Below are positions 14,021 through 53,759 of a DNA stretch of 64,000 bases, piece after piece. Numbering within the stretch: position 1 is the stretch's first letter; every line of letters starts with the position of its first letter. The DNA is taken from positions 25,559,649-25,623,648 of the forward strand of contig NC_092398.1 in the NCBI RefSeq assembly GCF_030028105.1, written 5' to 3'. The notes beneath the pieces are model-generated. The model did no database searches and was not told the origin of the DNA. It was given only the letters and a program-made list of their open reading frames with translations. Position numbers and translations under genes: made by a program. The DNA is from Mobula birostris (taxonomy: Eukaryota).

Positions 14021-16031
14021 TGGGTGGTCGGGAGGAATGAAGTCTGCTTTGTTGTCGTTGATTTATTGCTGTTCTGTTGTTGTTTTGTTGCTCGTATTGT
14101 TCTGATAAACATTATGTTGGCGCCAGAATGTGTGGCGACCTTAAGTTATGTTGGTTGTTAATGCAAACGACATATTCCTCTGTATGCTTGCTTTCAATAT
14201 ACGTGTGACAAATTAATCTTTATCGTTACCTTTAAGAAGAAAGATAGATTTCTGGATGTAGAAATTATCAAAGTGAGTAAAGAAAGAGAAAGAATATGTT
14301 GAGATCAGAGTATCAGTTCCCAATTATATTGAATGCAGCAAAAGGCTTGAAGTATTGAAATAGGCAAGTGAAAAAACACGGAATAGATTTAGTGGCTATC
14401 CACTTGATATCATCTTGTAGACCTCCATGAAGTCATCTCTTGCCTTCCTTCGCTCCAAAGAGAAAAGCCTGAGCTCGCTTAATCTTTTCTAAGACATGCT
14501 CACCAATCCAGGCAGAATCCTGGTAAATCACCTCTGCACCCTCTCTAAAGCTTCCATGTCCTTCCTATGAGGTAACCAAAACTGAACACACTACTCCAAA
14601 TGGGGTCAAACCAGAATTTAATTGAGCTGCAACATTACCTCCTCACTCTTGAATTGAATTCCCTGACTAATTGAAGGCAAGTACACCATACCCTTTCTTA
14701 AAGCGTAACAGTGGAAATGTGAGCAGTTTCCAGTTCTTGGGTGTTAACACCTCTGAAGATCTAATCTAGGTTCAACATATTGATGCAATTACAAAGAAGT
14801 CTCAATGGCGGCTGTATTTCATTGGGAGTTGGAAGAAAATTGGTATGTCACTACGGACTCATGCAGATTTCTATAGATGTGCTATGGGGAGCATTCAAAC
14901 TGGTTGCATCGCAGTTTGGTATGGCAAGGCCGTGACACAGGATCAGAAAACTCTGTAGAAAGTTGTAAACTCAGCCAGCGGCATCATGGGCACTAGCCTC
15001 CTCAACATCCAGGACATCTTCAAAAGGCGATACGTCAGGCAGGTAGCATTCATCACAAAGGACCCCATCACCTAGGACATGTCTTCTCTTTGCTACCATC
15101 AAGGAGGAGGTATGGGAGCCTGAGGAGGCACATTCAATGTTTCAGGGACAGAATCTTCCCATCGTCCATCAGATTTCTGAATGGACAATGAACCCATGAA
15201 CACCACCTCAGAATTTTTCCCTCTCTTTTTGCACTACGAATTTAATTTTATATGTCCTTCTTATTGTAATTCATAGTTTTATATGTCAACAAGACAACAA
15301 ATCAACAATTTACATGACATAAAAGGCATCCGTTAGTCTTACGAGACCATGGATCTGCACTTGGAAGGTCTTCACTCTCCAGGGCACAGTCCTGGGCAAG
15401 GTTGTATGGAAAACCGGCAGTTGCCCATGCTGCAAGACTCCCCTCTCTACGACACCAATGTTGTCCGAGGGAAGGGCACTAGAATCCATACAGCTTGGCA
15501 CCAGTGTCGTCGCAGAGCAATGTGTAATTAAGTGCCTTGCTCAAGGACACAACACATGCTACCTCGGCTGGGGCTCAAACTCACGACCTTCAGGTCACTA
15601 ATCCAATGCCTTAACTACTTGGCCACATTACGTATGCCAGTGGTATTAAACCTGATCTGATAACTTGTCCTATCAATCTTTGAGCGATCTATGGATGTGA
15701 GCCCCAAGATCCCTTTGCTTCTCCCCACTATTCATTAGAGGCATGCCTAGTTCTGGTCTACAGCACTACAGCTGGGGTGGCTTCTGTTCCGGTAAACTTT
15801 GTTGTATCCAATACTCTCAGCCATTTCTGATAGTCACGCGGTCAACGTAAGTGTGGTCTAACAAGTGTGTTGTCTAACATGGGAGCAAAGGGATTGAAAT
15901 TGTAACTTATGGTCAGATGGAACCTGCAACTCAGAAGACAGAAATCACCATGTTTCATGCAATTCATTCGCAACACACCCTACCCTTGAGACGACTCTTC
16001 AACTATCCTTCTTCTCAATTGTGTTCATCAG

Positions 16032-16269
16032 GGAAGACAGTCGACTCCAACACAGCTCTGTGGTTCTCAGAAACAGGCCTGCGATTTGGTTACGATGGCA
16101 AAGACGACACCTGTTTTGATTTCTCTGTCAGGAAATCTGTGGCCAGTATTCCACTGTTGGAAGACTTTATCAGTGGTCTGAGCCACCACAAACCCTGTCT
16201 TTGAAGTCAACCGTACCAAGGAAGTTCTGATCCTGAATGCCAAGCTGTCTACATCATAACATCATGGAA
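16032..16269 (+). pseudogene. psi-A membrane-distal domain exon (paralog of gene B exon 2), disrupted
   Basis: Acceptor ttctcaattgtgttcatcag|, phase 1. Encodes GKTVDSNTALWFSETGLRFGYDGKDDTCFDFSVRKSVASIPLLEDFISGLSHHKP, which aligns by eye with gene B LQFAYNSEVAVRFDYATGKIVAINPLVKSFVDDL. TGA at 16202-16204; a frameshift and a second stop are needed to reach a weak donor near 16270, so the 3' end is uncertain. Confidence 0.7.
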
Positions 16270-20542: not shown

Positions 20543-20815
20543 TGAAACGTTCCATCACCATAACGTTAACACAGCTGAACGTGGGAGTAAAGCCCTTAGT
20601 CCTGATGTACAGAGTGGATGGAATTTACCCAACGGACGTCAACACAGCATGGCTGCGGAATGGCGAAGCCATCAAGCAGAAGGTGTTCAGGAGCAGCATT
20701 TTGCCAAACTGACACATTCCAACTCAGACTTCATGTCAGCGTTGACCCCAGCAGGGGAGCACCTACACTTCTCAACTGGAGCACAGGGGTGTCCTGGAGA
20801 GATGTGCAGTTTGGG
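20543..20815 (+). pseudogene. psi-A Ig C1 exon (paralog of gene B exon 3), disrupted
   Basis: Acceptor tttctctccactgcag| and donor gtttggg|gtaagg nearly identical to those of gene B exon 3. Encodes VKRSITITLTQLNVGVKPLVLMYRVDGIYPTDVNTAWLRNGEAIKQKVFRSSILPN*, then TFQLRLHVSVDPSRG, then TYTSQLEHRGVLERCAVW. 5-bp and 1-bp deletions, a TGA stop, both Ig cysteines lost (TAC, TCT). Roughly 40-45% amino-acid identity to gene B by hand count. Confidence 0.9.
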
Positions 20816-29499: not shown

Positions 29500-30480
29500 A
29501 AACTCACACCTTCCCCTTCATCTGGCATATCCCCATCCACTACCCACCTGTCTACCATCCAAACACCTGCTATCCCCTCTTACCTGGTAGCCCCCCTCCA
29601 CACACACATCACACACACACACAAACACAGTTCCTCTCATCTGGTATACTCCCTCCCCCTATCACCCACCTTATTGCTCAACTGGTATCCCATCCACCCA
29701 CCTTCCCCCTCACCTGCTTTCCCCTCATTCCACCTCCCCCTCGCCTGGTATTACACCCGCCCACCTCCCTTCTCACCTGGAATCCCACCCTCAGCTGGTG
29801 TCCCACCCACACACCTACCTCCTGCTCACCTGGTATCCCACCCACACACCTACCTCCCCCTCACTTGGTATCCCACCCACACACCTACCTCCCCCTCCCC
29901 TGGTATCCCACCCATACATCTACCTCCCCCTCACCTGGTGTCCCACCTACCTCCCCCCTCACCTGGTGTACCACCCACAAACATACCTCCTCCACACCTG
30001 GTGTCCCACCTACCTTCCCCCTCACCTGCTTTCCCCCCATTCCACCTCCCCCTCGCCTGGTATTACACCCACCCACCTCCCTTCTCACCTGGAATCCCAC
30101 CCACCCAACCACCTCCCTTCTCACCTGGCATCCCACCCACCCTCCTCCCCTCAGCTGGTATCCCACCCACACACCTACCTCCCACCTCACCTGTTATCCC
30201 ACCCACACACCTACCTCCCACCTCACCTGTTATCCCACCCACCAACCTACCTCCCCCTCACCTGGTGCCCCACCCACACACCTACCTCCCCCTCACCTGG
30301 TATCTCACCCACACACCTACCTCCCCCTCACTTGGTGTCTCACCCACACACTTACCACCCCTCACCTGGTGTCCCACCCACACACCTACCTCCCCCCTCA
30401 CCTGGTGTCCCACCCACACACCTACCACCCCCTCACCTGTTATTACCCGACCCCATCCACGCTCCTCTCAGCCGGTATCC
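29500..30480. repeat. C-rich minisatellite (about 30-35 bp unit, cccctcacctggtatcccacccacacacctacct)
   Basis: Many degenerate tandem copies visible. Source of the spurious Pro-rich ORFs. Confidence 0.9.
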
Positions 30481-30529: not shown

Positions 30530-30900
30530 AAGTTGAAACAAAAGGGGTTCCCTCCCGCCTCGCCCCGCCTGTCTGTGGCAGCGGCCGCCCGCTCAGCCGG
30601 GGAAACTTCTACATCGATCGCCTCCCGTTACGGGACCTGCCGGCTGGCGATCGGTTTCGCGCGTAGCCGCTGTGTGACAAGGTCCTCAGCCTTCGGCGGA
30701 AGGGATGTGGGGAACGTTGCCGTCTCCGCGAACCGTGAGCCAGCTGCTCCTCCCGCTGTCTCAGGAGCCGCCGGCCGGCGTGAGGCGACGCCGCTCTCCC
30801 TCTCTGCTCGCCGCCTTCCTCCTCCTCCTCCTCAACGGCTCCACTGCCCTGGGTGAGGAGCGCAGCGCCCCAGGGATGGGAGGCGCCGGGGGAGGGGGCA
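30530..30900. promoter_or_regulatory. CpG island promoter of gene B
   Basis: The most conspicuous CpG-dense segment of the window. GC boxes (ccccgcct, ctcccgcct) and a kB-like GGGGTTCCCT near 30544, directly upstream of the leader ATG. Confidence 0.75.
30705..30852 (+). CDS. Gene B exon 1: leader/signal peptide of an MHC class II-architecture (W-category beta-like) gene
   Basis: ATG at 30705 inside a CpG island. Encodes MWGTLPSPRTVSQLLLPLSQEPPAGVRRRRSPSLLAAFLLLLLNGSTAL (basic n-region, hydrophobic core LLAAFLLLLL, small-residue c-region). Phase-1 donor G|GTGAGG at 30853, in frame with the exon at 32031. Confidence 0.8.
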
Positions 30901-31800
30901 CCGATGGAGCGTAGGGAGGTAGAGGGGGGTGGGGACACTGAGGGAGGGTGGGCAAGAGAGGGAAGAGGGCAACTAGGGAGGGAGGGTAAAGGTCAGGAGG
31001 GAAAGGGAGACCTCGCTGAAGGAAGGTGGAGAGAGTAGCACCAAGGGAGGGTGGGGAGGGGAACTGAGGGAGGGTTAAGAGGGGAGGGGAGCGGAGGGAA
31101 ATGGGCACCGATGGAGGGTGGGGAGGAGAGGGGAGTGACATTGAGGCAGGGTGGGGAGTGAGCACCAAAGGAGGGTGCAGAGCTGGGGGGAAGGGTGCCA
31201 ATGGAGGATGGAGAGGGGTGCAAAGGGAGGGTGGGGAGGAGGGGGTGCCAATGGAGGGTAGTGAAGTGGGCACCATGGGAGGGGAAGGGGTTCCAAAGGA
31301 GAGGAGAGAGGGCAGCGAATGGGCATGGGAAGGGAAGGACGGACTGAGAGAGAGCAGGGAGGGAGGGAGTGGAGGTGGATTGAGTATCGTTGAGGGGATG
31401 CAGAAGGGGAGGGGTCATTGGGGATGGTTGTGTGGGAAAGGAATTAGGGTGCCAAAGGTGTGAGGGGAGGGAGAGGGGTTCTAAGGGTGGGATGGAAGGC
31501 TGAGGAGTGGAGTTGTGGGAGTGCAGAGAGTGGGGAGGATAGAGGGCATGGAGATTGGGAGGGGAGAGGGCCATGGGTGAGTGGGTGGGGAGGGTCTGCC
31601 AAGGATGTTTGGGGAGGGAGGGAAGTAGTCACTGAGGGTGGGTAGGGAGAGAGGGGGTGGGTGGAGAGTTGGGTGTGGACGGTGAGGAGAGATGTCTGTG
31701 GGGAGAAGTGTTGAAGGAAGGGCACTTCGATGGCGAGGAGGGGTTTGGGCGAAGAGGCGGGTGGGGACGTGGGCATCGAACTGAGGAACAGGTGGGTGCA
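30860..31800. repeat. G-rich purine low-complexity tract in intron 1 of gene B
   Basis: Dense GGG/GGAGGG runs on the + strand with no domain-like coding signal. Confidence 0.85.
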
Positions 31801-32030
31801 GAGAGTGAGGGTGAAAGGTCAGCAGCACCACCACCAAATCCTAACTATTGGAGTTTTACGGTGGGAGGGAGAGGTGGCTCTGGAGGAGTGGCACCTTTTT
31901 GCTGTCAGAATGGTGTGGTATCCACAGAAGGGAGAGATAAATTCTTTCAGGTTGATTAATTTTAAGGTTTTAAAATGAGCCATTTCACTCTCACAAATGG
32001 TTAATGGATCGATTATTATTTGCTTGCCAG

Positions 32031-32288
32031 GAATGCACATCGGTCAAGTGACTTTCTCTGGTAAAGGTTCGGAGTTCTCAATGGCTACCCTGCAGTTTGC
32101 TTACAATAGCGAAGTAGCTGTTCGCTTTGATTATGCTACAGGAAAGATTGTGGCCATCAATCCACTTGTGAAGTCTTTCGTGGACGATCTGAACTGCAAT
32201 CGAAAGGTTATCAGAAATGTTGCCCGCTATGTTAATGACATGCCTGTTGCCATGGAGATTGTTCACCAGGCTGTTCAAGCTCTGACGG
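32031..32288 (+). CDS. Gene B exon 2: MHC membrane-distal (beta1/alpha2-like) domain
   Basis: Acceptor ttatttgcttgccag|, 258 bp, phase 1-1, donor G|GTAAGT. Encodes GMHIGQVTFSGKGSEFSMATLQFAYNSEVAVRFDYATGKIVAINPLVKSFVDDLNCNRKVIRNVARYVNDMPVAMEIVHQAVQALT. The FAYNxxxxVRFD strand pattern followed by a helical region matches the MHC groove-domain layout. Confidence 0.85.
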
Positions 32289-32399
32289 GTAAGTTTATTT
32301 TCACAAAAAAAAAAATCTGCAGATGCTGGAAATCCAAGCAGCACCCACAAAGTGCTGGAGGAGCTCAGCAGGCCAGGCAGCATCTATGAAAAAGAGTAC

Positions 32400-32435
32400 A
32401 GTCAACGTTTCGGGCTGAGACCCTTCATCAGGACT
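32400..32435 (-). ncRNA. Minimal type I hammerhead ribozyme in a Penelope-derived repeat (about 32310-32750)
   Basis: Minus strand reads AGTC-CTGATGA-A-GGGTCTCAGCCC-GAA-ACGT-T-GACT: catalytic core, stem I AGTC/GACT, stem II and palindromic ACGT stem III. Confidence 0.7.
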
Positions 32436-35400
32436 GGAGAAACAAGTTGAGGAGTCAGAGTTAGGAGGTGGAGAGGGGTGAAGTAAGGAGCTGGGGAGTT
32501 GATTGGGAAAAGAGGTGCAGGGCTGGAGGAGGACGAATCTGATAGGAGAGGACAGAAGGGCATGGAAGAAAGAAAGGGGGGAGGTGATGTGCAGGTAAGG
32601 TGAGAGAGTGAAAAGGGAATGGGGAATGATGAAATGGGGGGGGGTGTTATTACTGGAAGTATGAGAAATCGATGTTCATGCAATTAGGTTGGAGGCTACC
32701 CAGGCGGAATATGAGATGTTACTCCTCCAACCTGAGTGTGGCCTCATCCTGACAGAAGAGGAGGCCATGGCATGGGAATGGGAAGTGGAATTAAAGTTTT
32801 GTTTTCAAAGCGATGTTCAAGCAGGCTGTGTGGCATAGGCTGACAGAGAGGGCAAAACAAGGGAACACACGCACCAGTCCTCAAAGAGGAATCAGAAGCG
32901 GAGGGAGTGAGCAATTTCAAGTTATTAGGCGACAATATCTCTGAGGATCTATCCTGGGCCCTACATGTCCAGGCAGTTATAAAAAGGCACAACAGTGGCT
33001 ATATTTTATTACGAGTTTGAGGAGATTTGGTATGTCAAATTTCTACAGATATACCATGGAGAGGTACAACTGGCTGCCCATGTGGGGAGGGGGTGTAGAT
33101 ACTGCAAAGGGTTGAAAGAAGCTGCAGAAAGTTGTGAACTCAGTTAGTTCCATCATGCGTACGATCCTCCTTAGCATTCAGGAAACTTCAAGGAGTGATG
33201 CCTCAAAAAGGCAACATCCATTATTGAGGACCCTCACCACCCAGGACATGCCCTCTTCTCAGTGCTCCCTTCAGGGAGGAGGTCCAGGAGCCTGAAGGCA
33301 CACACCAAAGGATTCAGGAAAAGCTTCTTCCCTTCTGCCATCAGCTTTATGAACAGTCCATGAAAAACCCATGAACATAACCTCACTATTTTTGCTCTCT
33401 ATCTGAACTATTTATTTCATTTAAATATGTTTATAATTGTAATTTATTCCTTTTATGTATCACACCATATTGCTGGCAGAAGACAGCAAACTTGTCAGCA
33501 AGAAGACCTGATACTCAGTGACCACTTTATTAGGTTTTTCCTGTGGCTAATAAAGTGGCCACTGAGTGTATGTTCGTGGTCTTCTGTTGCTGTAGCCCAC
33601 TGTTTCCCAACTTCTTTTAGCCCCATGCCTCCCTAAAGCACTTTCATACTAGCCAATACTCCTGTTAGGCACAATGTACTTTCTGGCACCCCCATGGTGT
33701 AAAAACATGTCTACCATATGCTAACATGAGAAAACTGATTCTGATTTAAATTGTTATTTGTCTTTAAACCTAGCTTACACAGTACCTACACACTATACAG
33801 CAGCTTTGACATGAATGTGATCCTTAAGCTTGAAGGTTTTTTAGCAAGAATTGAAATATCTGGTTCAAGTTGTGACAGCAAAAGCCTTAAGTCAAGGCTT
33901 TAGAATCACACCTGACAATATCCAAGCGGTTTCTGTTTTTTTGTGAGTTTGTGGCTCATTGCACTTTCAATAAGGTAGGAGGATAGAAATGCAATGAAGA
34001 ACAGTTTGGCTCTTCTTCAAAGACCAGGAAACTTCATATGACCCTCTAGCCACATACCACAGAAGTCGACATCTTTTAATTTTTTTTATTTTTTATTTTT
34101 ATTGAAGGAAGGACACAATACAGAATACATGGATTACATTTTCCTCCATTTTGCTTTTATATCTTACCCCTAAACAAACCTCCCCTCGCCTGCCCTCCCC
34201 GAACATACCATGGCAGCTGTATTTATAATATTATTTATTGTATTTACAATACAACAATTCACAAATACAAGTACAGACATTGCACAGCCATACCCCCACA
34301 CTACTTCAAGACGAAGGCCCACATACATCCACAACACGTCAGATGATCCAAAATACACTCATATTACAGCTCAACAACCATCCATAAACCATATGCGTGT
34401 TAAAAGGGAGGCAACTTCCCAAGTACAATCAAATGCCCTCAGCTCGTAGGTAATTCCTTAAGACCTCCAAAATATGACAAGAAAGGTCCCCATTTTGAAT
34501 AGAATTTTTTCACAAACCCTCTCAAAGTGAATTTAATCTTTTCTAATTTTAGAAAAAACATTACGTCCTCTAACCAAGCAGCAGCAGATGGGGGAGTGGC
34601 AGATTTCCAGACCAGCAAGATTCTCCTACAGGCCAATAGTGATGTAAATGCAATGATATCCGACTGGCTTGCATTTAAACCCAAAACATCATCTGCCACA
34701 CCAAATACAGCTATAAGCGGGCAAGGTCTCGGTGTCACCCCCAAAACCTCACTGATAATTTTAAAAACCAGTGCCCGATAGCCATCAAGCCGAGAACAAG
34801 ACCAAAATGTATGCACTAAACCAGCCGGAGAGAACACTTGTCACAGCCAGCGTCTGTCCCGGGATATATGTCAGCAAGGCTGGCTTTACATAAATGTACC
34901 CTGTGTAAAACTTTAAATTGTATGAGCCCCAGTCTAGCACATGATGATGAGGAATGAACCTTATTCAATGCTTTTGTCCAATATTCCTCAACCAGATCCA
35001 TTCCAAGGTCATTCTCCCACCTAGTTTTAGTTTTGTTTAGATCTTGAACTCCCAAAGACATCAGCTGAGAGTATAGTACAGAGATCAGCCCTTTATTATT
35101 AAAGCTAAGAGTGCGTTTTTCCCACAATATAGCAGGGGGTAGATCAGAAAAAGAGGGAAATTTTTCCTTGACAAAGTGGCGAATCTGCAGGTATTTAAAA
35201 AAATGATTATGCAGAAGGCCATATTTACTGCACAGGTTATCAAAACTATCAAATATGTCATCAGTGCAAATTCTTAATGCGCATAAGACCGTTCAAATCC
35301 CATTGTCTCAAAAGTGAATCGAGTGTGGAGGAAAGAAATAGATGGTTTCTATGAATGGGACCCAAAACTGAAGCTGATGTGAACTTACAGTGGAGCGAAA

Positions 35401-37500
35401 TTGATTAAAAATTTTGAGGGTGGAGAGCACGACCGAGTTAGATGTGAATTGAGAGGATTTCAATGGTAAGGAAGAATACACTAAAGCTGAGAGAGACGAG
35501 GAGTGGCAAGACCATGTCCCAAGCGGGCACCAGTTTATATCTGGCCGGTGGAGCCAAAATAATACTTTTTGAATGTTCGATGCCCAGTAATAATGAATAA
35601 AGCTAGGAAGACCCATTCCACCTACGTCACGACCTCTTTGGAGAGTGTGCTCATTAACCCTTGAGACCTTATTTTCCCAAATAAAGGAAGTTATAGCTTG
35701 GTCGACTGATTTGAAAAATAACTTAGATAAGAAAACTGGCAAGCACTGGAACAAATAAAGAAATCTGGGAAGTTTAGACATTTTCACTGATTGAATTCTC
35801 CCAGCTATAGTAAGAGGTAAACTGCACCATCTCTCAAAATCAGCCTTTACTTGGCTAACCTGAGGCCTGTAGTTAGCTTCAGAGATGTAAAAGAGCAAGT
35901 AACATGTATTCCTAGGTATACAAAACCATCTTGAGATACAGGAAAAGGCAAAGATTCCTGTCGGATCTGTAGGGCCAAGTTATTAATGGGAAATCATTTG
36001 CTTTTTTGAAGGTTCAGTTTATAGCCAGAGAAGGCTCCAAATTGACCTAATAATGACGCAATAGCAGGACTGCTACCTGCAGGGTCGCTACCGTAAAGTA
36101 AGAGGTCATCAGCATATAGGGATACACGGTGTTCCACCAAGCTACCAATATTCTGCCAAATCCAAATTTCTCCAAAACACTAAACAAGTATACCCACTCC
36201 ACTCTATCAAACGCCTTCTCCACGTCCAAGGAAATAACAACCTCCGGACTCGGAGAATCACTGGGTGAATAAACCACGTCAGCCAGTTGACGGATATTAA
36301 AAAAAGAATGGCAATTTTTAATAAAACCTGTTTGATCATCTGAGATTATCTTGGGAAGGGGGCGTTCTAAACGGCACGCAAGCACTTCACCAAAATTTTC
36401 ACGTCCACATTCAAAAGTGAGATGGGGCGATATGATCCACATTGAGTCGGGTCCTTGTCCTTTTTAAGAAGTAGTGAAATAGCTGCCTGTGAAAGAGTAG
36501 GGGGTAAGGGACCATTCTCCAAAGATTCCTGAAACACTTCTAGAAGGACCGGTATGAGCTTATCCTTAAATTTCTTATAAAATTCTATCAGATCACCATC
36601 AGGACCTGGGGACTTACCACTCTGCATAGCCATAATGGCATTATTAATCTCTTCCTGCCCCAAGAGCCCGATCTAAATTCTCCACTTCCTCTGGTTCAAG
36701 AGTTGGTATTTCCAAATTATCTAAAAAACGTTCCATATTTGTTATATCTGATGGAAACTCTGAGGTATACAGAGAGGAATACAAAGTTGCAAAGATGTTA
36801 TTAATCTCTTTTGGATTGCTTGTCAAGCTTTGGTGCGTGTCTCTTATCTGGGGAATAAGTCGTGATGCAGCTTGATGCTTCAACTGATGAGCCATAAGCC
36901 GGCTCGCCTTGTCACCATATTCATAATAGAGGCCACGTGTCCTAAGAATTAATTGTTCTGATAGGTTTGTAGAGAGAAGATTAAACTTCACTTGCAAATC
37001 AGCCCAGCTTTTATATAATTCTGCAGTGGGTGCCTCAGAATATTGCCTATCCAGGTCCAAAATAGATTGCGATAACACTTGCATTTCCTTCCTATGCTCT
37101 TTATTGGCATGTGAAGTATAAGATATTATTTGATCCCTCAAGTAAGCTTTTAAAGTTCCCCAAAGTAAAGAGTACGATACCGACTCAGTTTTGTTGGTCT
37201 CGAAGAATGTGTCAATTTTAGCCGATATACAACTACAAAATTTCTCATTGGAAAGTAAAAGGGGGCTAAGTCTCCGCAGAGGCCGTTCTCTAATGTTTAA
37301 AGGAAAACATAGGTCCAATTTCACGGGCGAGTGATTGGATATAACTATAGCAGTGTACTCAATTTGTCTAATCATTGGTATCAAGGAGCTATCTATAAAG
37401 AAATAGTCTAGCCTGGAATAGGAGTGGTGAACATGAGAAAAGAAAGAGAATTGCCTAACTGATGGATTCAAAAATCTCCAAGATTCCATATAACCATTTT

Positions 37501-40449
37501 CATAGAAAATAGGTGCAGGAGTAGGACATTCAGCCCTTCGAGCTGGCACCACCATTCAGTATGATCATGGCTGATCATCCAACTCAGAACCCTGTACCTG
37601 CCTCCTCTCCATCCCCCCTGATCCCTTTACCCACAAGGGCCATATCTAACTCCCTCTTAAATATAGCCAATGAACTGGCCTCAACTGTTTCCTGTGGCAG
37701 AGAATTCCACAAATTCACCAATCTCTGTGTGAAGAAGTTTTTCCACATCTAGGTCCTAAAAGGCTTCCCCTTTATCCTCAAACTGTGACCCCTCGTTCTG
37801 GACTTCCCCAACATCGGGAACAATCTTCCTGCATCTAGCCTGGCCAATTCCTTTAGAATTTTATACATTTCAATAAGATCCTTTCTGAATCTTCTAAATT
37901 CCAGAGACTATAAGCCTAGTCAATCCAGTCTTTCATCATATGAAAGTCCTGCCATCCCACGAATCAATCTGGTGAACCTTCTTTGTACTCCCTCTATGGC
38001 AAGAATGTCTTTCCTCAGATTAGGGAACCAAAACTGCACACAATGCTCCAGGTGTGGTCTCACCAAGGCCTTGTACAACTGCAGTAGTACCTCCCCGCTC
38101 CTGTACTCGAATCCTCTTGCTATGAATGCCAGCATACCATTTGCCTTTTTCACCGCCTGCTGTACCTGCATGCCCACTTTCAATGACTGGTTTACAATGA
38201 CACCCAGGTCTCGTTGCACCTCCCCTTTTCCTAATCGGCCACCATTCAGATAATAATCTGTTTTCCTGTTCTTGCCACCTCACATTTACCCACATTAAAT
38301 TGCATCTGCCATAAATTTGCCCACCCACCTAACCTATCAAAGTCACCCTGCATCCTCTTAGCATCCTCCTCACAGCTAACACTGCCGCCCAGCTTCGTGT
38401 CATCCATGAACTTAGAGACAGTGCATTTAATTCCCTCCTCTAAGTCATTAATATATATTGTAAACAACTGGGGTCCCAGCACTGGGCCTTGCAGTACCCC
38501 ACTAGTCACTGCCTGCCATTCTGAAAAGGTCCCGTTTATTCCCACTCTTTGCTTCCTGTCTGCCAACCAATTCTCTATCCACATCAATACCATACCCCCA
38601 ATACCGTGTGCTTTAAGCTTGCACACTAATCTCCTGTGTGGGACCTTGACAAAAGCCTTTTGAAATCCAAATATACCACATCCACTGGTTCTCCCCTATC
38701 CATTCTACTAGTTACATCCTCAAAAAATTCTATGAGATTCATCAGACATGATTTTCCTTTCACAAATCCATGCTGACTTTGTCCAATGATTTCATTGCTT
38801 TCCAAATCTGCTGTTATCACATCCTTGATAACTGACTCTAGCATTTTCCCCATCACCGATGTCAGGCTTACCGGTCTATAATTCCCCGGTTTCTCTCTCC
38901 CTCTTTTTTTAAAAAGCGGGGTTACATTAGCCACCCTCCAATTCTCAGGAACTAATCCAGAATCTAAAGAGTTTTGAAAAATTATCACTAATGCATCCAC
39001 TATTTCTTGGGCTACTTCCTTAAGCACCCTGGGATGCAGACCATCTGGCCCTGGGGATTTATCTGCCTTTAATCCCTTCAATTTACCTAACACCACTTCC
39101 CTACTGACATGTATTTCCTTCAGTTCCTCCATCTCACTAGACCCTCGGTCCCCTACTATTTCCAGAAGATTATTTATGTCCTGCTTAGTGAAGACAGAAC
39201 CAAAGTAGTTATTCAATTGGTCTGCCATGTCCTTGTTCCCCATAATCAATTCACCTGTTTCTGTCTGCAGGGAACCTACATTTGTCTTAACCAATCTTTT
39301 TCTTTTCACATATCTATAAAAGTTTTTACAGTCAGTTTTTATGTTCTCTGCCAGCTTTCTCTCATAATCTTTTTTCCCTTTCCTAATTAAGCCCTGTGTC
39401 CTCCTCTGCTGGACTCTGAATTTCTCCCAGTCCTCAGGTGTGATGCTTTTTCTGACTAATTTGTAGGTTTCTTCTTTAGAATTGATACTATCCCTAATTT
39501 CCCTTGTCAGCCACGGGTGCACTACTTTCCCTGGTTTATTCTTTTGACAAACTGGGATGAACAATTGTTGGAGTTCATCCATGCGATCTTTAAATGCTTG
39601 CCGTTGCATATCCACCTTCAACCCTTTCAGTATCACTTGCCAGTCTATCTTAGCTAATTCACGTCACATACCTTCAAAGTTACCCTTCTTTAAGTTCAGA
39701 ACCTTTGTTTCTGAATTAAATATATCACTCTCCATCTTAATGAAGAATTCCACCATATTATGGTCACTCTTACCCCAAGGGCCTCACACGACAAGATTGC
39801 TAACTAACCCTTCCTCATTGCTCAATACCCAGTCTAGAATGGCCTGCTCTCTAGTTGGATCCTCGACATGTTGGTTCAGAAAACTATCCCGCATACATTC
39901 CAAGAAATCCTCTTCCTCAGCACCCTTACCAATTTGGTTCACCCAATCTATATGTAGATTGAAGTCACCCAGTATAACTGCTGTTCCTTTATTGCACGCA
40001 TTTCTAATTTCCTGTTTAATACCATCCCCAAACTTACTACAACTGTTAAGTGGCCTGTACACAACTCCCACCAGTGTTTTCTGCCCCTTAGTGTTATGCA
40101 GCTCCACCCATATCGATTCCACATCCTCCCGGCTAATGTCTTTCCTTTCTATTGCGTTAATCTCCTCTCTAACCAGCAATGTCACCCCACCTTCTTTCCT
40201 TTCATGTCTATCCCTCCTGAATATTGAATATCCCTGAATGTTGAGCTCCCATCCTTGGTCACTCTGGAGCCATGTCTCTGTGATCCCAACTATATCATAT
40301 TCATTAATAACTATCTGCACATTCAATTCATCCACCTTGTTACGAAGGCTCCTTGCATTGACACACAAAGCCTTCAAGCTTGCTTTTACAACACTCTTAG
40401 CCCTTATGCAATTATGTTGAAAAGTGGCCCTTTTTGATTTTTGCCCTGG
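37501..40449 (-). mobile_element. CR1 LINE (ORF2 EN plus RT) nested in L1 ORF2
   Basis: CVNARSLRNK, GITETWL, KSPGPDG and FMDDTKLG motifs; 3' tail at 37501; 5-bp TSD ATTTT (37496-37500, 40450-40454). Confidence 0.95.
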
Positions 40450-41587
40450 ATTTTGTTGCATAAACATCGAGAAGGCCTTTGCCATACCAGAAAATGTTCC
40501 CCTAGAGCTAGACCTATCAAGCAGTGGGTCAATAGCACAGTTCAAATCTCCTGAAAAGATTAGATGGTGTGTATTCAGGTTAGGTATTATTGACAAGACC
40601 TTATTCGCAAAGTGGACGTCGTCCCAATTAGGGGCATAAGCATTTACCAAAATGACAGGTATCTGAAAAAGAGATCCAGAGACTATAATAAAGCGACCAT
40701 TAGGGTCACTGATTACATCAGATGGTGTAAACTGCATTCTATTGGTGATTAATATTGCCACCCCCCTGGACCTACTATTAAATCTGGAATGAAAACCTAA
40801 CTAATCCATGCTTTATGAAGTCTATTATGGTCTGCCACTCTTAAATGTGTCTCTTGTAGAAATAGTATATCTGCCTTTAATTCTTTCAGATGAGAGAAAA
40901 CTTCAGCTCTTTTAACAGGACCATTGACCCCTTTACACTCCAAGAAGTAAACCTCACAGGGTGGACTCCATCAGCAGCACTCACGTTAACCATATTAAAA
41001 GACAAACAGGACCTACAATCCAAACAGTGCGAGGGCACAAGCTGCACACAATAACGCACAATGAAAAGAAAGTCTGGCCAATCCATAACACACAAAACAA
41101 TAAGCTGCCATGGAAATACCCCAAAACACTCCCCCCCACCCCTTTACACAAACAACAAAAAAACCCAATTAACCCCCGAAAACTAGATCTACCTCCCCAA
41201 CTGAGGATGATAGCAGGCATTACCAAACAAAAAATTTCCAAAGCGTTCCCCATACAACCAAACTTTCAATCTAATCTAGGGTGGCTCCCCTCCTTAAAAT
41301 TTTTACCGTCACTTATTCTACCTTTAATATATATAGGCTAAGAATAACACAGGTCAAGCAAAACATCTTAAAAAAATTAGGAAACTAAATGCCAGAGATA
41401 CAAATCCCGAATGTTTACATTTTTCTGGTTAAAAGTTTTTGTTAATCAGATTCCGCAGCACAGCAGTTCGACCCGATTGTGTTCCTCAAATTAAAATGGA
41501 AAAAAATGAACAAAGTGAATTGCGAAAATTAACAGTTTGCCTCGGCAGGAGGCCCCTTCAATGCTGCATGAATAACCTAAAAGAAAG

Positions 41588-42502
41588 TCATTGCTCTTCT
41601 TGTTCTTCTTCTCCCCAGTGTGAATGGTAAAACTCTTTGGCCGCCTCTGGTGAATCGAAATAATGTTTTTTACCTTCATGCATGATCCGGAGCCAGGCAG
41701 GATACAAGAGGCCAAACCTGACCCCTTTCCCATAAAGCAGGGATTTCACCTCCTTGAAAGCTGCTCGTTTTTCCCCCAGCTCCGCACTAAAATCTTCATG
41801 AAAAAACACACGATGTCCACAGAAATACAGCTTCTGCTTCCTTCTATTGATGCATTGCTTATCTTGAAAGAAGTGAAAGAGAACCAGGAACGTTCTTGGT
41901 CTCGTTTGTTTAGCTTCAGAGACACCGGCTGGTTTAGGCCTGACTCGGTGAGCACGCGAAAGCACGAGAGGCCTTGGGAAGAAATTTGTCCACAGCACTT
42001 CGTCAAAAAACTCAGTCATAAATTTAACAGGGTCCGAACCTTCCAAGTTTCCAGGAATGCTGACCAATCTCAAATTGGATTTCTGCGACCGATTTTCAAG
42101 GCCATCAAGCTTTCTCTTCAGAAATGCGTTTTCGCTCTGCAACGCTGCAATGGCGGCTTCGGCGCTCACCAGTCGGTCACTGTAATCATTCAGGCCATCT
42201 TCAACCTCACGAATGCGTTCGTCATGTGACTCGTAATAAGACATAATTTGTTCCATGGTTACATTCACTGGTGACAAAGCATCTTCAAGTTCTCTTTTTA
42301 GGGCAGAATGCATCGCTTGCATCATGTCAGTAAGAAGTACTAAACAAAACCTCTCCAAGTCATCGGGCAGTGCAGGTCCAGGTCCAGCAACATGCAATAG
42401 CACCATTACTGTAACATCAGCTTTCTTGCTCGAGGCTTCACTATCTGTTTCCCCAGTTTTACTTCGAAGGTACATTTTATTTGCCATTTCAGTGTCCAGC
42501 AA
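41588..42502 (-). CDS. L1 ORF1p (304 aa, open)
   Basis: Coiled coil (ERIREVEDGL...LENRSQKSNLRL), RAHRV and FHEDFS motifs typical of L1 ORF1. Confidence 0.85.
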   Translation of the reverse strand: MLDTEMANKMYLRSKTGETDSEASSKKADVTVMVLLHVAGPGPALPDDLERFCLVLLTDMMQAMHSALKRELEDALSPVNVTMEQIMSYYESHDERIREVEDGLNDYSDRLVSAEAAIAALQSENAFLKRKLDGLENRSQKSNLRLVSIPGNLEGSDPVKFMTEFFDEVLWTNFFPRPLVLSRAHRVRPKPAGVSEAKQTRPRTFLVLFHFFQDKQCINRRKQKLYFCGHRVFFHEDFSAELGEKRAAFKEVKSLLYGKGVRFGLLYPAWLRIMHEGKKHYFDSPEAAKEFYHSHWGEEEQEEQ

Positions 42503-45500
42503 TGTCCTGGGTTGTTCACAATGTTAAATATTCAGTTATCTCAAGCATACGGCAAAGGTAAACAGGTAGATTTTCAATAAAAATTGGGAGCCACATTCAC
42601 ACGCACCCAGTCACTCCATGCCCAACCTGGAAGTCCCAAAAGTCGACATTTTTAAATAAACATTTTTTCTTCTCCCTTATTCTGAATTTTGATAATTTCT
42701 TCTTGCAAGCTCTCTTTCTGTTCTTCCACCTTGCAAAGGAATGGGCTAATTACCCAGTCCGAAATTTCTGGATCATTCAAATCCTTGAATCAATTCTGAA
42801 AATCATTCTTTGGTGACTGCAGGTGTAAGGAGCACTCTTGCAAATCACCATCTGTGAAAGAGAGTGCCATACTTTCCATGCAGGGAAACTGAGAATGTTC
42901 TTCTCCCAATGTTTTACTTGTATATTTCCAATTTTCTGATAAGAGTGGACATTGCACTTTTTGCCTGGATGAAATTGAAGTTTTCACCCTGCAGTTTCAT
43001 ATTTAGAATATTCAGTTTGTCATACAGATTGGCTTCGTTTGCCACATCTCCATATAGAAGTTCAATCTTGTTGAATTCCACCAGTGTCAAAAAGATCAAA
43101 GAAACGTTTTAAGCAGCAACCTTTTGACAGCCAACACACTTCAGTATGAAGAAGCATGCGTTCAATCTCTGCATTGTTATCTTGGCATAAATGGTGAAAT
43201 ATTCTGCTATTTAATGGATGAGCTTTAATTTTGTTGATAGCAGATATTACAAGAGTTATGCTTGAAAAAACTCACGAGCTGAGGTTTTTGGCTGCGAGAT
43301 GTTGACGATGAATTACACAATGGATTGCAAACAGACTTGGAATTTCCTTTTTCATTAATGCCACTAAACCGGCCATGGCAACCTGTCATTTATGGTGCTC
43401 CATCTCTTGTACAAGAAATCATGTTCCTAATTGAAATACTTTCATCCTCAATATACATTTTACAAATGAGAATTTCTTCATAAACTTTCCCCTTTTTGAC
43501 AAACCGTACATATGACTTTAGCAATGCCGCGTTGCCTTACGCTGTTTACTCATCCAGTTGTATCCCAAATTCTGTTTTCTGTGGCTCTGTGTACAGTTGA
43601 TATTCCACATCTTCACTCATTTCATCAATATGATGAGCTATCGCTCAGAGGAATTGATTTTAAAATACTGGTTTCCATTTTGAGAACAGTGGTGAAGCAC
43701 TTCTGATACAGCCGGCATTATTAATCTTTCACCAATTCTATGAGATTTTCCACACCTTGTTATCATTTTGGAAATGATATAAGAAGCAATAAGACCACAA
43801 GCAACGTCATTTCTTGGCAAATGACTCGAGTGTGCAATGGTTTTCCAATGCTTCTTTCATCTTCTTGAACCGATTAATACCATAAGTAGCCTTTTCAGGG
43901 TGTCTTTTACAGAAGTGTTCCTGCAATCTTGATGGTTTCATGGATTCATTAGACAGTACAGTATTACAAATAGGAAACATGGGGCGCTGCTGATCTAACA
44001 GGATGGAATAAAACCATATTCCAGGTATGTAACTTTGTATTGACACACTTTGTGTAATTTCTGTTTCTTAGCAGGATTAGAATCCAAGGCTTCACCACCT
44101 TCAAACTTGTAGAGATCGCACCGTACATACTTACCCATTGTTAACGGGGCTAAATTAAAATAATAAATTAACACCACTGGGAATGCCTATCGGATGTTGA
44201 TGGCAGTGAGTTGACACGGATGGAACGATGGCAGTGGCACGCAAAGGAACAGCGAGGCAAAGGTGAAGACGATCACAACTGCAAAAATTACATTGACAAG
44301 GATTCAGATTGGAATCGAATGTTAGTCGGGACAGAGCTTGTGTTTGGGAGGCCATCTTCTTACTATTCCAGTCAGCACGATTGACCAGTCACGTAAAGTT
44401 TCGTAATCCCCAAAGATGGTTCTTGACCGCACATATGAAGCCGAGGTCACTTTGAACACCTCAAGAGGATTCCTCAGTGTTGACGGGTTCACTGATTGAC
44501 TCTATTTCTCCATTTGGTTCTGGCCAGCGCTGTATCATTGCGTGACCTGTTTTCCATAGATCTGTTGCGAAGGTGGAGAGAGTGTACTTGACCTATCAAC
44601 TATTAAATTGCACGAACTCGTTCCGTGCTGCAAGCCAAGGGTAATTGTTGGACACCCTGTTTGTTAATTTATGCATCCCCAATAATGTCTGTTTGGTTGG
44701 TAAGGTTGGATGAGATTGTCAAATTTCAGACTTGTTGTGATGACGGGTGCTCACCGCCTGCTGAGCTGTGGTTCTTCCTGTGTTCCAGTGCCTCATCCTT
44801 TTTGTCCGAAGTGCCTAGTCTACTAACGGTCGGTCAGGTCTCGAGCCTCAAGTAGGGGTGTCACTCTTCCCCCATGACATCATACAATACCGCACTCCCC
44901 TTGGGAATCACTGCTGCAGCTCAGTCACTTTGAGGTGTGACATGTTGTACGTTCAGAGATGCTCTTCTGCACACCACTGCTGTAACACATGGTGATTTGA
45001 GTTACTGTCCCCATCCTGTCAGATTGAACCAGTCTGGCCATCCTCCTCTGACCTCTCTCATTAACAAGGTGCTTTCACCCACAAAACTGCCGCTCACTGG
45101 ATGTTTTTTCTTTGTCGCACTGTTCTCTGTGAACTCGAGAGACCGTTGTGTATGAAAATCCCAGGAGATTAGCAGTTTCTGAGATACTCAGACCACCCCA
45201 TCTGGTCCATGGTCAAAGTTAATTAGATTGTATTTCTTCCCCATTCTGATGTTTGGTCTGAACAACAACTGAACCTCTTGACAACGTCTGCATGCTTTTA
45301 TGCATTGAGTTGCTGGCACATGATTGGCTGATTAGAGGTTTATATTAACGAGCAGGCGTACCTAATAAAGTGGACACTGAGTCTATGTCATTGATATCAG
45401 ACCTGATTCTGATATGCACTAACCTGTAACTAATTAACCTCACTATGCAAATATTTATTCCTAAGTATTTCCACCTTACGGAAACTTTGGGTTACCGACA

Positions 45501-46196
45501 GTTCTTGAAACACTTGTGACTTAGGAGTGACTGAAAGAACCATACCGCTGGTGAGAGGCAGATGAGCAGGGGACAGTTTCTAAACACAAAAGATTCTGCA
45601 GATGGTGGCAATCCAAAGCAGTTCCGGATTGGCACACACTCACACTCACACTCACACTGACACTCACACTCACACACTCACACTCACACACACACACACA
45701 CACACACACAAATTCAGCAGGCCAAGCAGCATCTAGGGAGGTGAATAAACATAGGAACAGAATTAGGCCATTCGACCTATTGTGTCTGTTCCACCATTCC
45801 GTCATGGTGGAATCTCAAGGTTATATACGTTATACTTTATTGTCGCCAAACAATTGATACTAGAACGTACAATCATCACGATCATATTTGATTCTGCACT
45901 TCCCGCTCCCTGGATTACAAATTGATAGTAAATATTAAAAATTTAAATTATAAATCATAAATAGAAAATAGAAAAATGGAAAGTAAAGTAGTGCAAAAAA
46001 ACCGAGAGGCAGGTCCGGATATTTGGAGGGTACGGCCCAGGTCCGGGTCAGGATCCGTTCAGCAGTCTTCTCACATAAAGTATATCGTACACATGCTTTA
46101 ATAATAAACATACTTTGAACTTTGAAATTCTGTTGCTCTTTACTTTTCCTGATCCTGTAACCAAGTTCAGCTTCAATGTGTTTCTGTCCACTGCAG

Positions 46197-46478
46197 CGAA
46201 GCTGACGATCACAATAACCTCAAGACACCTGAAGAACAGAGAGAATAACTTGGCCCTGACATGCCAAGTGCATGGATTTTATCCCAAGAAAATCCACGCA
46301 ACGTGGCTGCGGAATGGTGTGGCGATCGATCAGGAAGTGCTAATGACGAAAATTTTACCCAACCAGGATAGGATGTTCCAAGTCCGGCTACAGGTCGAAA
46401 TTGACCCTGGGAAGGGTGACACTTACACTTGTGAAATCGAGCATCTGAGCGTCCCTGACAAGCTGCATACAGTTTGGG
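46197..46478 (+). CDS. Gene B exon 3: MHC-type Ig C1-set domain
   Basis: Acceptor tttctgtccactgcag|, 282 bp, phase 1-1, donor G|GTAAGG. Encodes AKLTITITSRHLKNRENNLALTCQVHGFYPKKIHATWLRNGVAIDQEVLMTKILPNQDRMFQVRLQVEIDPGKGDTYTCEIEHLSVPDKLHTVW, with canonical C1 motifs (LTCxVxGFYP, W, YxCxxxH). In frame with exon 2. Confidence 0.95.
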
Positions 46479-49300: not shown

Positions 49301-49576
49301 AATGAGGCCTAGGGAGTGATGGGCAGTTCTAGGACAGTGGTCTCCAACCTCCGGGCCGTGAAGCATGCAGGGGTGCAACGGTAGCCGGAGCGCACCCAGC
49401 ACATCTTTAAGAAAAAAGCTAAACAAGCTAATTAATTAGGTGCCGTCCAGCATGTAAATGTTGGCCCAGATCAGAGGCTCTTGGCTTCATCCCTCCCCCT
49501 CCTGTCCTGTCCTATCATTTCGGGTCTCCTCCTCCCCCTTCCTCTCTCAAATCTCTTACTATGTCTTTTTTCCGTT

Positions 49577-51333: not shown

Positions 51334-53759
51334 TCCTGAAAACATGAACACTGCCTCACTTCTTTTAAATATATATTTTTAATCGATTCAATATACACAT
51401 ATACTTACTGTAATTGATTTACTTGGTTATTTAAATTTCCTTCTCTAAAATCATTTATTGCCGCTGCTAATATACGCCGGTGAAAATAAACCTGATTCTG
51501 ATCATTTGTAGTTTTACAGCGGCAGTACGGTGCATAGACCATAAATTAGTGCAAAAAAAGAGAACAGTGTTCATGGATTCATGAACTGTTCCGAAATCTG
51601 ATGGCAGAAGCTGGCTCTTCAGCCTCCTGAAGCTCATCCCGACGATTGTAATGAGAAGAGGGCTTGTCCCAGTTGGAGAACTATGTGTGTATACATCCGT
51701 ATAGAACATAGAATAGTACAGCACAGTACAGGCCCTTCGGTCCACAATGTAGTGCCGACCCTCAATCCTTGCCTCCCATATAAGCCTCCACCTTAAATTC
51801 CTCCATATGCCTGTCTAGTAGTCTCTTAAATTTCACTATTATATGTACTAGTACTAGTGAACTAGTGTACTAGTACTAGTACGAGTATATCATATACTAG
51901 TATAGTATATGATCTGTATATGGTCACTCCTCTGACGAATCTGCTCTTTCAATACATGTTCGAGATCCTCATTTTTCACTTTAAGCAGTGTTTTCTATTT
52001 TTCATTAAGTTCTGATCATCACATATGTGAGGTCACTTCTCAGAGCTGTCTGTGGTGTGCAGAGACCTGCACATTGTCTGGGAACCTTCCCTGCACCTCG
52101 TGGAATTTTCCATCCGTGACATCATGTCAGCACTAAAAAAAATAAGGATTTCAGAGGTTTCAGATACTGGAATTTCAGATAAGATGTCCTCGACCTTTAT
52201 TATGGGTAACATGAGAAGGCACAATTTTAAGGTGCTTGGAATTAGATACAGAGGAGATGTCAGGGGTAAGTTTTTTTACAAACAGTGCTGAGCGTGTGGA
52301 ATGGGCTGCTGGTGATGGTGGAGGAGGCAGAGAAAATAGGGTCTTTTAAGAGGCTCCTGGAGGTACATGGAGCTTAGAAAAATCGAGGGCTATAGGTAAC
52401 ACGAGGTAATATCTAAAGTAAGTACATGTTAGGCACAGCATTGTGGGCCGAAGGGCCTGTATTGTGCTGTAGGTTTTCGATGTTTCTATTATTATTTGTT
52501 TTTTTTGTATGTATTTGCACAGTCTGTCTTCTTTTGCAGATTGGTTGTCTGTAGTTTTTCATTGATTCTAATGTATTTCTTTGTTCTGCTGTGAATGCCC
52601 ACAAGAAAATGAATCTCAGGGAAGTATATGGTGACATATACGTACTTTGATAATAAATTAACTTTGAACTTTGAACTTTGATATATGAGGAATGGTTGGA
52701 TCTGCACTGAAAGGGACATCAAATTCCAGTTTACTGTCATCTGCACAAGTACACATGCGCACTCAGGAAATGAAAGATAATGAATAAATAATGTCATATA
52801 AGCAATGTTTACCAGAAAAACGTAAATCGCACACTATTTTTACAAGAAAGAACAGAATAACAAAACAAAGACTATTTTAGTGCAAAATGGTGAGAGTTCG
52901 TTCAACTCTCAAGATTGGGATTTTGTCAGCAGGTTTGAGAACACGTGGTTGAAGTGAAGGTGCTGTTCCTGAACCAGGTGACATGGGACTTCAAACTTCT
53001 ACACCCTCCTACCCCCTTCTATCAGTCAGAGGCTCGTACGAGTCCAGGGTTCAAGGCCTGGAGTTTGGGGTCCCGTGAAGGTGAATACCGCAGAATGGCA
53101 ACCCATAGGTCAAAGACCGAAGTCATTGGGTCCCAAAGTCTCGTTCTGATGTTTGACACCCTGGGTCGGCATGTCTGGAAGTCAGAGGCCTGATGTTAGC
53201 AAATGCACCAGAGGCGTCCTGTCCTGGGATTGGAGGCCTGTCTGTGTGGGTGGGTGGAAGAGAGGATAGGGCTTTGCGTCGCTGTCATCGTCATTGCTTG
53301 TGTTGTTCTGCTGAACATTGAGACCACGCGATGTTGGTGCCAGGATGTGTGGCGACACTTGCAGGCACGTCTTTAGGTTGTGTTGTTTGTTAATGCAAAT
53401 GGCGAGCTTCACTGTATGTTGCTATAACAAGAGAGCAATGAACGGTGGTGAACACAGGTGCAGAGTGCTGTCTAGAATACACCTAGACTCAGACTTAGAC
53501 ACAGACTCGAAATAACCAAGACGACACAAACAAACTCCAAAGGTGAAATCACAGAAATGGAACTCCTATGATTGAGCACAGAGTGCTCAGCACGAGGCCG
53601 TACAGAAATGTGGCATGCAATAATTGGCAGTCTGACTCAGGGACAGCGGCAGCCAACCATACTCCTTGGTCTCTCTGTTCTACAACCGACCTTTCCTCTA
53701 ATTCTTTTTACCACTGAGTGGACTAACCACTGCTCTGAAAACTACCTGGCACTTTAAAT

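What the first reader, a model, noticed from the sequence alone, without database searches (positions are those of the whole stretch)
30705..46478. MHC gene with class II architecture but class I-type motifs (W-category beta-like)
Seen: three exons splice in phase 1 into one open frame (leader, a single groove domain, one Ig-C1). The 1178-bp intron 1 is mostly G-rich low complexity with no second groove exon, so this is not a class I heavy chain. Established: W-category MHC genes, described in cartilaginous fish and other jawed vertebrates, combine class II alpha/beta organisation with class I interdomain residues. Inference: this is a WB chain or a related divergent non-classical lineage, easily missed because only 688 coding bp are spread over 16 kb of TEs.
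Basis: partly seen in the sequence, partly recalled or inferred. Interest (0 to 1): 0.92.

Follow-up and report, generated by a model that had tools for sequence, protein, structure and literature searches.

The report
Truncated W-category MHC beta gene copy
This is a real copy of a W-category MHC beta-chain gene in a manta/devil-ray-like genome, a family published in 2021, but it has no membrane-anchor exons and is most likely a decaying duplicate.

Summary
Exons 30705-30852 (leader), 32031-32288 (groove domain) and 46197-46478 (Ig-C1) have AG/GT borders and join in phase 1 into one open 229-codon frame. No other groove exon exists in the window.

The W-category reading also holds. [quoted passage not shown] The ray family includes a thorny-skate protein whose Ig-domain start matches the published "little skate WB_DS1-like".

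The gene is not complete. The CP/TM/CY exons are absent from the 17.5 kb downstream. Collinearity with the TM-bearing Mobula hypostoma paralog ends at 49309, about 500 bp before its TM exon. The two closest loci, one in M. birostris and one in M. hypostoma, share this truncation. Each also has its own frameshift in the groove exon. The window copy is still open but differs at three near-invariant family positions.

Verdict: a new member of a known kind, probably an unprocessed truncated pseudogene in a multicopy W cluster. NCBI already annotates its relatives as "class II beta-like". First-stage notes of this scan, not checked here, also report W-category clusters elsewhere in this genome. Interest is modest.

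The parts
30705..30852 (+). Exon 1: start codon and a long leader with a hydrophobic core that ends ...STALG. Donor GT, phase 1.
   Evidence: 88-94% identical to the leaders of Mobula WB_DS1-like proteins.
30853..32030 (+). Intron 1: 1178 bp, G-rich imperfect repeats, no MHC-like exon.
32031..32288 (+). Exon 2: single membrane-distal (beta1) groove domain of 85 codons. It has no cysteine pair. Q6 and A32 are kept; G35 is S.
   Evidence: Pfam MHC_II_beta 28.6 bits. 88% identical to P0001 and 35% to shark WB_DS1-like. Family alignment.
32289..46196 (+). Intron 2: 13.9 kb filled with nested retrotransposons. LINE EN/RT ORFs lie on the minus strand at about 35.3-40.8 kb.
   Evidence: Parts are absent from the related loci L001, L003 and L006.
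46197..46478 (+). Exon 3: Ig C1-set (beta2) domain with LPNQDRMFQ. P57 is present; position 61 is R, neither the class II W nor the usual WB G. Donor GT, phase 1.
   Evidence: 98% identical to P0033. RNA contigs of close paralogs end exactly at these borders.
49309..49310 (.). Point where collinearity ends with the TM-bearing paralog locus L003 (M. hypostoma), about 500 bp before that locus's CP/TM exon. The sequence beyond, up to 51838-51844, is shared only with the TM-less loci L006 and L007.
16031..16203 (+). Pseudo-beta1 exon of an upstream paralog (psi-A). It is 62% identical to the second Pristis sublineage (P0032), with a premature stop and a frameshift.
20543..20815 (+). Pseudo-beta2 exon of psi-A. 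The first Ig cysteine is replaced, and there are in-frame stops and a frameshift. It is also present at the start of L003.
29677..30443 (+). C-rich 35-bp minisatellite of about 20 copies, directly upstream of exon 1.
   Evidence: The proline-rich ORFs are its translation.

Best explanation
The stretch holds the 5' three exons (leader, beta1 groove half-domain, beta2 Ig-C1) of a W-category MHC beta-chain gene. It belongs to the WB_DS1-like lineage and sits in a ray close to Mobula.

Inferred from the published family, not shown for this copy: intact members are type I membrane glycoproteins with class II beta architecture. They pair with a WA alpha chain (WA_DS10-like in sharks) to form a class II-shaped heterodimer. 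The interdomain contacts of that dimer use class I-type residues: P57, no W61 in beta2, and Q6/A32/G35 in beta1 facing the W61 of the alpha chain. They are non-classical. They lack the groove disulfide and the class II peptide-anchoring W61/H81/N82, and their ligand is unknown.

Shown here: this copy has lost its connecting-peptide, transmembrane and cytoplasmic exons. The loss is shared with the two closest Mobula loci, and each of those has acquired its own frameshift in beta1.

The window copy keeps an open frame. Even so, it is most likely an unprocessed, truncated pseudogene that has not yet been hit by a disabling mutation. At best it would give a non-anchored product.
For: Exon structure and open frame.

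Family assignment:
- An exhaustive HMMER search with beta1 found only three proteins at E<1e-3: the Mobula relative and two lamniform-shark proteins.
- The start of the Ig domain of the Amblyraja family member P0019 reads the same as 'little skate WB DS1 like 01' in Dataset S2.
- Diagnostic residues can be read.
- Beta2 is closest to class I alpha3/MR1 in the PDB. The beta1 profile hits class II beta at 4e-5 and class I alpha2 at 3e-3.
- An AlphaFold model of the M. hypostoma relative has the order four strands, helices, Ig domain, TM helix. Its best structural matches are HLA-DR beta chains.
- In the trees the window is sister to P0033 inside the myliobatiform WB_DS1 clade. The IIB, IIA, class I and CD1 clades are separate. 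One clade of WB_DS1 plus the window is not rejected (AU p=0.31).

Truncation:
- No TM/CY match exists anywhere in the window.
- L003 has its TM exon 3.3 kb after beta2, and collinearity stops at 49309.
- L006 and L007 share the sequence after the break (95% identity) and have no TM exon within 23 kb in L006 or 13 kb in L007.
- Their gene models end in intron read-through or in a repeat-derived exon.

Decay:
- L006 has a 1-bp deletion in beta1. L007 has a 1-bp insertion plus a 7-bp deletion.
- The window's beta1 differs from L006 by 3.9%, the same as the flanking non-coding DNA (2.4-4.9%).
- The window alone has G76S, P138L and T195M at sites at least 94% conserved across 18 family members.
Against: All three exons are open, with canonical splice sites. 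Exon 3 differs from L006 by only 1.1%, less than the flanking DNA. That could reflect constraint or homogenisation by paralogs.

Three deviations at conserved sites is not an outlier count; other family members show 0-6.

The window ends 17.5 kb after exon 3, so a distant TM exon cannot be excluded. M. hypostoma has a gene model that spans more than 280 kb of the cluster.

Outside 23459-51838 the window is not collinear with L006 or L007. It may therefore be a recent paralog of those loci rather than their ortholog.

No RNA from the window's own species could be identified, so the expression and the 3' end of this copy are untested.
Confidence: 0.7

Rival explanations
1. It is a complete, functional WB_DS1-like gene. 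Its CP/TM/CY exons lie beyond the window's end, behind a large insertion or shared with a downstream unit of the cluster.
For: The frame is open and the splice sites are canonical. Introns in this family can be very long: 10.6 kb separates the last two exons in L003, and one M. hypostoma gene model covers more than 280 kb. Exon 3 is better conserved than its flanks.
Against: The closest loci share the same break and show no TM exon for 23 kb (L006) or 13 kb (L007) after beta2. Both carry frameshifts in beta1. Their annotated transcripts end in intron or repeat-derived sequence.
Confidence: 0.15
2. It is a TM-less variant kept as a soluble or secreted W beta chain, or as a decoy that pairs with WA.
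For: The leader, beta1 and beta2 frame survives in the window. The related loci have annotated, spliced gene models without a TM exon.
Against: The two related copies are frameshifted in beta1, so no conserved TM-less product exists. Their tail exon is repeat-derived and absent from the window. The window copy has changes at the G35 and G61 contact positions.
Confidence: 0.08
3. It is a divergent conventional class II beta gene or a class I-derived gene, not W-category.
For: There is a weak Pfam MHC_II_beta hit, and NCBI names the relatives 'class II beta chain-like'. The top structural matches are HLA-DR beta.
Against: It has no W61 in beta2 and no beta1 disulfide. P57 is present. No class IIB or class I protein reaches E<1e-3 with beta1 in the exhaustive search. 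Its relatives match the published WB_DS1-like sequences. It lies outside the IIB and class I clades. It has a single groove exon.
Confidence: 0.03

Closest known systems
W-category MHC beta chain, WB_DS1-like lineage (Okamura et al. 2021, PNAS, PMC8713811)
   Same: It has a leader, a single beta1 and an Ig beta2, in phase-1 exons. It has LPN.D with P57, no W at position 61, Q6 and A32 in beta1, and no beta1 disulfide. Beta1 is 35% and beta2 52% identical to the Cetorhinus (basking shark) WB_DS1-like protein P0002, which clusters at 90% identity with the white-shark protein P0006. [quoted passage not shown]
   Different: This copy has no CP/TM/CY exons. G35 is S, G61 is R and the following T is M. 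No WA partner gene lies in the 64-kb window.
Mobula birostris XP_072102720.1 (P0033) and M. hypostoma XP_062891232.1 (P0057) gene models, both named 'DLA class II DR-1 beta chain-like'
   Same: They share a collinear segment (window 23459-51838) at 93-94% identity. They share the break before the TM exon. Beta2 is 98% identical to P0033.
   Different: Both Mobula loci have frameshifts in beta1, while the window's beta1 is open. The flanks outside the shared segment differ. Their repeat-derived terminal exon is absent from the window.
Mobula hypostoma XP_062891132.1 (P0001), a TM-bearing WB_DS1-like paralog (locus L003)
   Same: Beta1 is 88% and beta2 89% identical. It is collinear with window 20526-49309, including the upstream pseudo-beta2 exon.
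   Different: L003 goes on to a CP/TM exon 3.3 kb after beta2 and to cytoplasmic exons. It keeps G35 and G61.
Conventional MHC class II beta chains (e.g. HLA-DRB, chicken BLB2)
   Same: The domain order and fold are the same. They are the best structural match and give a weak beta1 sequence match.
   Different: It lacks the invariant W61 of beta2, the C15-C79 disulfide and the peptide-anchoring W61/H81/N82 of beta1.

Membership tests
W-category beta chain (WB) | Class II-type extracellular exon organisation: a leader, one membrane-distal domain exon and one Ig C1 exon, all in phase 1 | tested here: met
W-category beta chain (WB) | CP/TM/CY exons with the beta-chain type glycine-rich TM | tested here: not met
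   No match in the window. Present in relatives P0001, P0009 and others.
W-category beta chain (WB) | P57 in the Ig domain (class I alpha3-type contact to Y8 of the partner) | tested here: met
   ILPNQD in exon 3. The LPN motif is invariant in the family. Definition.
W-category beta chain (WB) | No tryptophan at Ig position 61; most WB have G | tested here: met
   Position 61 is R (DRMFQ), so it is not W. The usual G is replaced, as in P0008, P0009 and P0033.
W-category beta chain (WB) | Class I alpha2-type beta1 residues Q6, A32, G35 and D37 that face W61 of the alpha chain | tested here: inconclusive
   Q6 and A32 are present. G35 is S, although it is invariant in the 18 relatives. Position 37 is V, where shark DS1 has E and class I has D.
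W-category beta chain (WB) | Sequence kinship with published WB sequences | tested here: met
W-category beta chain (WB) | Paired with a linked WA gene | tested here: not met
   No alpha2-type exon exists in the window. WA_DS10-like alpha2 exons do lie near WB genes in L001, L002 and L005. An earlier scan note puts an alpha/beta pair 144 kb upstream; this was not checked.
W-category beta chain (WB) | Forms a heterodimer with WA and reaches the cell surface | not testable with these tools
   Shown only for tiger salamander WA and WB in PMC8713811.
Conventional MHC class II beta | Invariant W61 in beta2 and the C15-C79 disulfide in beta1 | tested here: not met
   Position 61 is R. Beta1 has a single cysteine and no pair. 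In the family-profile alignment, the position opposite class II beta1 W61 is the conserved L.
MHC class I heavy chain | Two groove exons (alpha1, alpha2) before the Ig exon | tested here: not met
   There is one groove exon only. No Pfam MHC_I hit and no further MHC-like exon in introns 1 or 2.

The most novel reading that the evidence does not exclude
Two novel readings remain open. First, the open leader-beta1-beta2 frame could persist because this species uses a TM-less W beta chain. Second, and more broadly, the Mobula WB_DS1-like paralogs may be under diversifying selection in the strand-to-helix core of beta1. There, dN is 0.19-0.36 against dS 0.06-0.16 in codons 24-72, while introns differ by only 2-12%. 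That would imply a ligand- or receptor-binding role for a W-category lineage so far regarded as non-polymorphic and of unknown function.
Probability: 0.15. Interest if true: 0.55.

Novelty: new member of a known kind. Interest (0 to 1): 0.25.

Why it matters

This copy adds little to that question. It shows that the WB_DS1-like lineage in manta/devil-ray relatives is a birth-and-death multigene cluster, with truncated and frameshifted copies beside intact ones. It also shows that automatic annotation files these genes under "class II beta-like".

Practical lesson for the scan: an open three-exon frame is not enough to call an intact gene here. The 3' exons and the state of related copies have to be checked.

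Tried and rejected
1. TM/CY exons. I searched with the tails of five relatives at word size 2 and E up to 200. Only chance hits came back.

2. L001 as ortholog. I first took L001 (M. birostris P0009) as the ortholog and saw an oddly divergent beta1 exon, 86% against 96-98% in the flanking introns. L001 turned out to be a paralog. Against the closest locus L006, beta1 diverges at the intron rate. The 'hypervariable exon' is therefore a difference between paralogs, kept only as a side note.

3. TE insertion at 49310. I looked for terminal inverted repeats or a second copy of the junction sequence. None was found.

4. SRCR neighbour gene. It lies next to L006 and L007, but no SRCR motif is present in the window.

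5. Protein searches. The word-indexed searches returned no cartilaginous-fish class IIB or class I and no WB_DS3 or WB_Nds5 full-length proteins. The trees therefore use three teleost IIB, reptile and teleost class I, CD1, IIA and one white-shark WB_DS3 Ig exon. The backbone is unresolved, as Okamura et al. also report for this domain group.

6. Read laying. Only contigs about 95% identical to exon 3 were found. Their changes match paralog L003 (organism B) or an unsampled paralog (organism A), not this copy.

7. P0001 and P0013. Neither could be located by exact look-up. Longer isoforms were used instead.
Full report
**Observation.** Exon 1 (30705-30852) starts with ATG and ends before GT. 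Exon 2 (32031-32288) and exon 3 (46197-46478) are each flanked by AG and GT. Joined in phase 1, the 688 bp give an open 229-residue frame. Intron 1 is 1178 bp of G-rich imperfect repeats. Intron 2 is 13.9 kb and carries LINE endonuclease and reverse-transcriptase ORFs on the minus strand. Pfam assigns exon 2 to MHC_II_beta (28.6 bits against a cut-off of 20.9) and exon 3 to C1-set. A tblastn of all 56 MHC-family proteins gathered up to that call finds only five MHC-like exon regions in the window. These are the three exons and an upstream pseudo-pair. There is no second groove exon, no alpha-chain exon and no TM exon.

**Family assignment.** An exhaustive HMMER search of 1.84 billion representative proteins with the 85-residue groove exon returned three hits at E<1e-3:
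- a Mobula hypostoma protein (88% identity), and
- two lamniform-shark proteins (32-35%).

[quoted passage not shown] 2021 (PMC8713811).

Word-indexed searches then recovered a ray family from Mobula, Hemitrygon, Hypanus, Pristis, Rhinoraja and Amblyraja. All are named class II beta-like by NCBI. The start of the Ig domain of the Amblyraja member reads the same as "little skate WB DS1 like 01" in the paper's Dataset S2.

The diagnostic residues defined in the paper are mostly present:
- P57 is present, in LPNQD.
- Position 61 is not W.
- Q6 and A32 are present in beta1.
- There is no beta1 disulfide.

In the PDB, beta2 is closest to class I alpha3 and MR1. A beta1 family profile hits chicken class II beta at 4e-5 and class I alpha2 at 3e-3. 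That is the mixed signature expected of the W-category.

An AlphaFold model of the M. hypostoma relative shows four strands, helices, an Ig domain and a TM helix. Its domain pLDDT is mostly 73-90, and its best structural matches are HLA-DR beta chains.

Domain trees place the window's beta2 as sister to M. birostris P0033, inside the myliobatiform WB_DS1 clade. The IIB, IIA, class I and CD1 sequences form separate supported clades. For beta1, one clade of WB_DS1 plus the window is not rejected (AU p=0.31). The backbone is unresolved, and the outgroup sample lacks cartilaginous-fish class IIB and class I. The trees therefore exclude nesting in the sampled clades but do not prove a WB clade.

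**The gene is incomplete.** Intact relatives continue after beta2 with a CP/TM exon (VPKNTYPVYGY...) and cytoplasmic exons. Nothing like them lies anywhere in the window, even at very permissive settings.

The M. hypostoma locus L003 encodes P0001 and is collinear with window 20526-49309. Its TM exon lies about 500 bp beyond the point where collinearity stops.

The sequence after 49309 is shared, at about 95% identity, only with two other loci:
- L006 (M. birostris, model P0033), and
- L007 (M. hypostoma, models P0057, P0013 and P0058).

These two loci lie 3.7-4 Mb from the main WB cluster on their chromosomes. L006 shows no TM exon for 23 kb after beta2, and L007 for 13 kb. Their annotated transcripts end in retained intron, in a repeat-derived terminal exon, or (P0058) in another short exon.

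Both have disabling changes in beta1. L006 has a 1-bp deletion. L007 has a 1-bp insertion plus a 7-bp deletion.

**State of the window copy.** It is still open, but several signs point to weak constraint:
- Its beta1 differs from L006 by 3.9%, the same as the surrounding non-coding DNA at 2.4-4.9%.
- It alone has G35S, P-to-L at the first beta2 strand and T-to-M after position 61. All three sites are at least 94% conserved among 18 relatives.

The most economical reading is an old truncated duplicate that is decaying independently in each lineage. Here it has not yet been hit by a frameshift.

**Caveats.**
- Exon 3 is only 1.1% diverged from L006.
- Three deviations is within the family's range of 0-6.
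- Outside 23459-51838 the window is not collinear with L006 or L007. Window, L006 and L007 are about equally distant from each other at 93-95% identity. The window may therefore be a recent paralog rather than the strict ortholog.
- A TM exon more than 17.5 kb downstream cannot be excluded.

**Expression.** RNA contigs from two ray species cover exactly 46196-46478 at about 95% identity. One of them is a 1843-nt contig. Their base changes match paralog L003 in organism B and an unsampled paralog in organism A. This confirms the exon 3 borders for the family, not transcription of this copy.

**Surroundings.**
- Upstream lies a pseudogene pair: beta1-like at 16031-16203 and beta2-like at 20543-20815. 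It has stops and frameshifts and belongs to a second ray sublineage, closest to Pristis P0032.
- A C-rich 35-bp minisatellite abuts exon 1.
- WA_DS10-like alpha2 exons (L37, W61, Y8) sit near WB genes in L001, L002 and L005, but none is in the window.

**Comparison with the literature.** The W-category was described in 2021. WB_DS1-like genes were reported there in sharks and the little skate, along with a possible pseudogene and read-through transcripts. Veríssimo et al. 2023 (PMC10751288) reported W-type genes as multicopy and outside the MHC in elasmobranchs. First-stage notes of this scan report W clusters 144 kb upstream and 3.1-3.4 Mb downstream in the same genome. I did not check those notes.

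**Verdict.** The W-category reading is supported and refined to WB_DS1-like. The "hidden intact gene" reading is not supported: this is probably a truncated pseudogene copy. It is a new member of a known kind, and interest is modest.

Noticed in passing
window 32111-32250 compared with L001, L003 and L004: Among Mobula WB_DS1-like paralogs the central part of the beta1 exon (codons 24-72) has dN 0.19-0.36 against dS 0.06-0.16. The flanking introns differ by only 2-12%. This pattern fits diversifying selection or exon-limited gene conversion in the groove region of a W-category lineage.
   Followed up: partly
window 16031-16203 and 20543-20815: The upstream pseudogene exons belong to a different WB_DS1-like sublineage. 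They are 56-62% identical to Pristis P0032, which is intact in sawfish. The pseudo-beta2 exon is conserved at the start of the M. hypostoma locus L003.
   Followed up: partly
L006 35837-35938 and L007 41422-41523: The terminal exon of the TM-less Mobula gene models (...VHNPDVME.DVKS.EKHLENFRNAWFAAAATV) lies in a repeat that has 75-80% identical copies in several loci. It is therefore an exonised repeat. It is absent from the window.
   Followed up: partly
L001 about 36838-37029 (-), L005 about 31683-31940 (-), L002 about 4213-4566 (-): These are WA_DS10-like alpha2 exons with the W-category hallmarks: L at position 37, the DW(R)F tryptophan at 61, and Y8. In L001 and L005 they lie downstream of the WB gene on the opposite strand. 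In L005 the annotation fuses one to an SRCR gene model.
   Followed up: partly
window 29677-30443 and 30853-31800: Exon 1 is bracketed by a C-rich 35-bp minisatellite upstream and G-rich imperfect repeats in intron 1. Whether the two are inverted relatives was not tested.
   Followed up: no
window 23459 and 51838-51844: Collinearity with both L006 and L007 begins and ends at the same two window positions. This suggests a segment of about 28.4 kb that was duplicated, or whose flanks were rearranged, in one lineage.
   Followed up: partly
M. hypostoma OY992621.1 27.87-28.15 Mb (loci L003-L005): One NCBI gene model with a 321-aa product spans more than 280 kb and overlaps several separate WB_DS1-like genes. 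The cause could be read-through or shared-exon transcripts, or a merging artefact.
   Followed up: no
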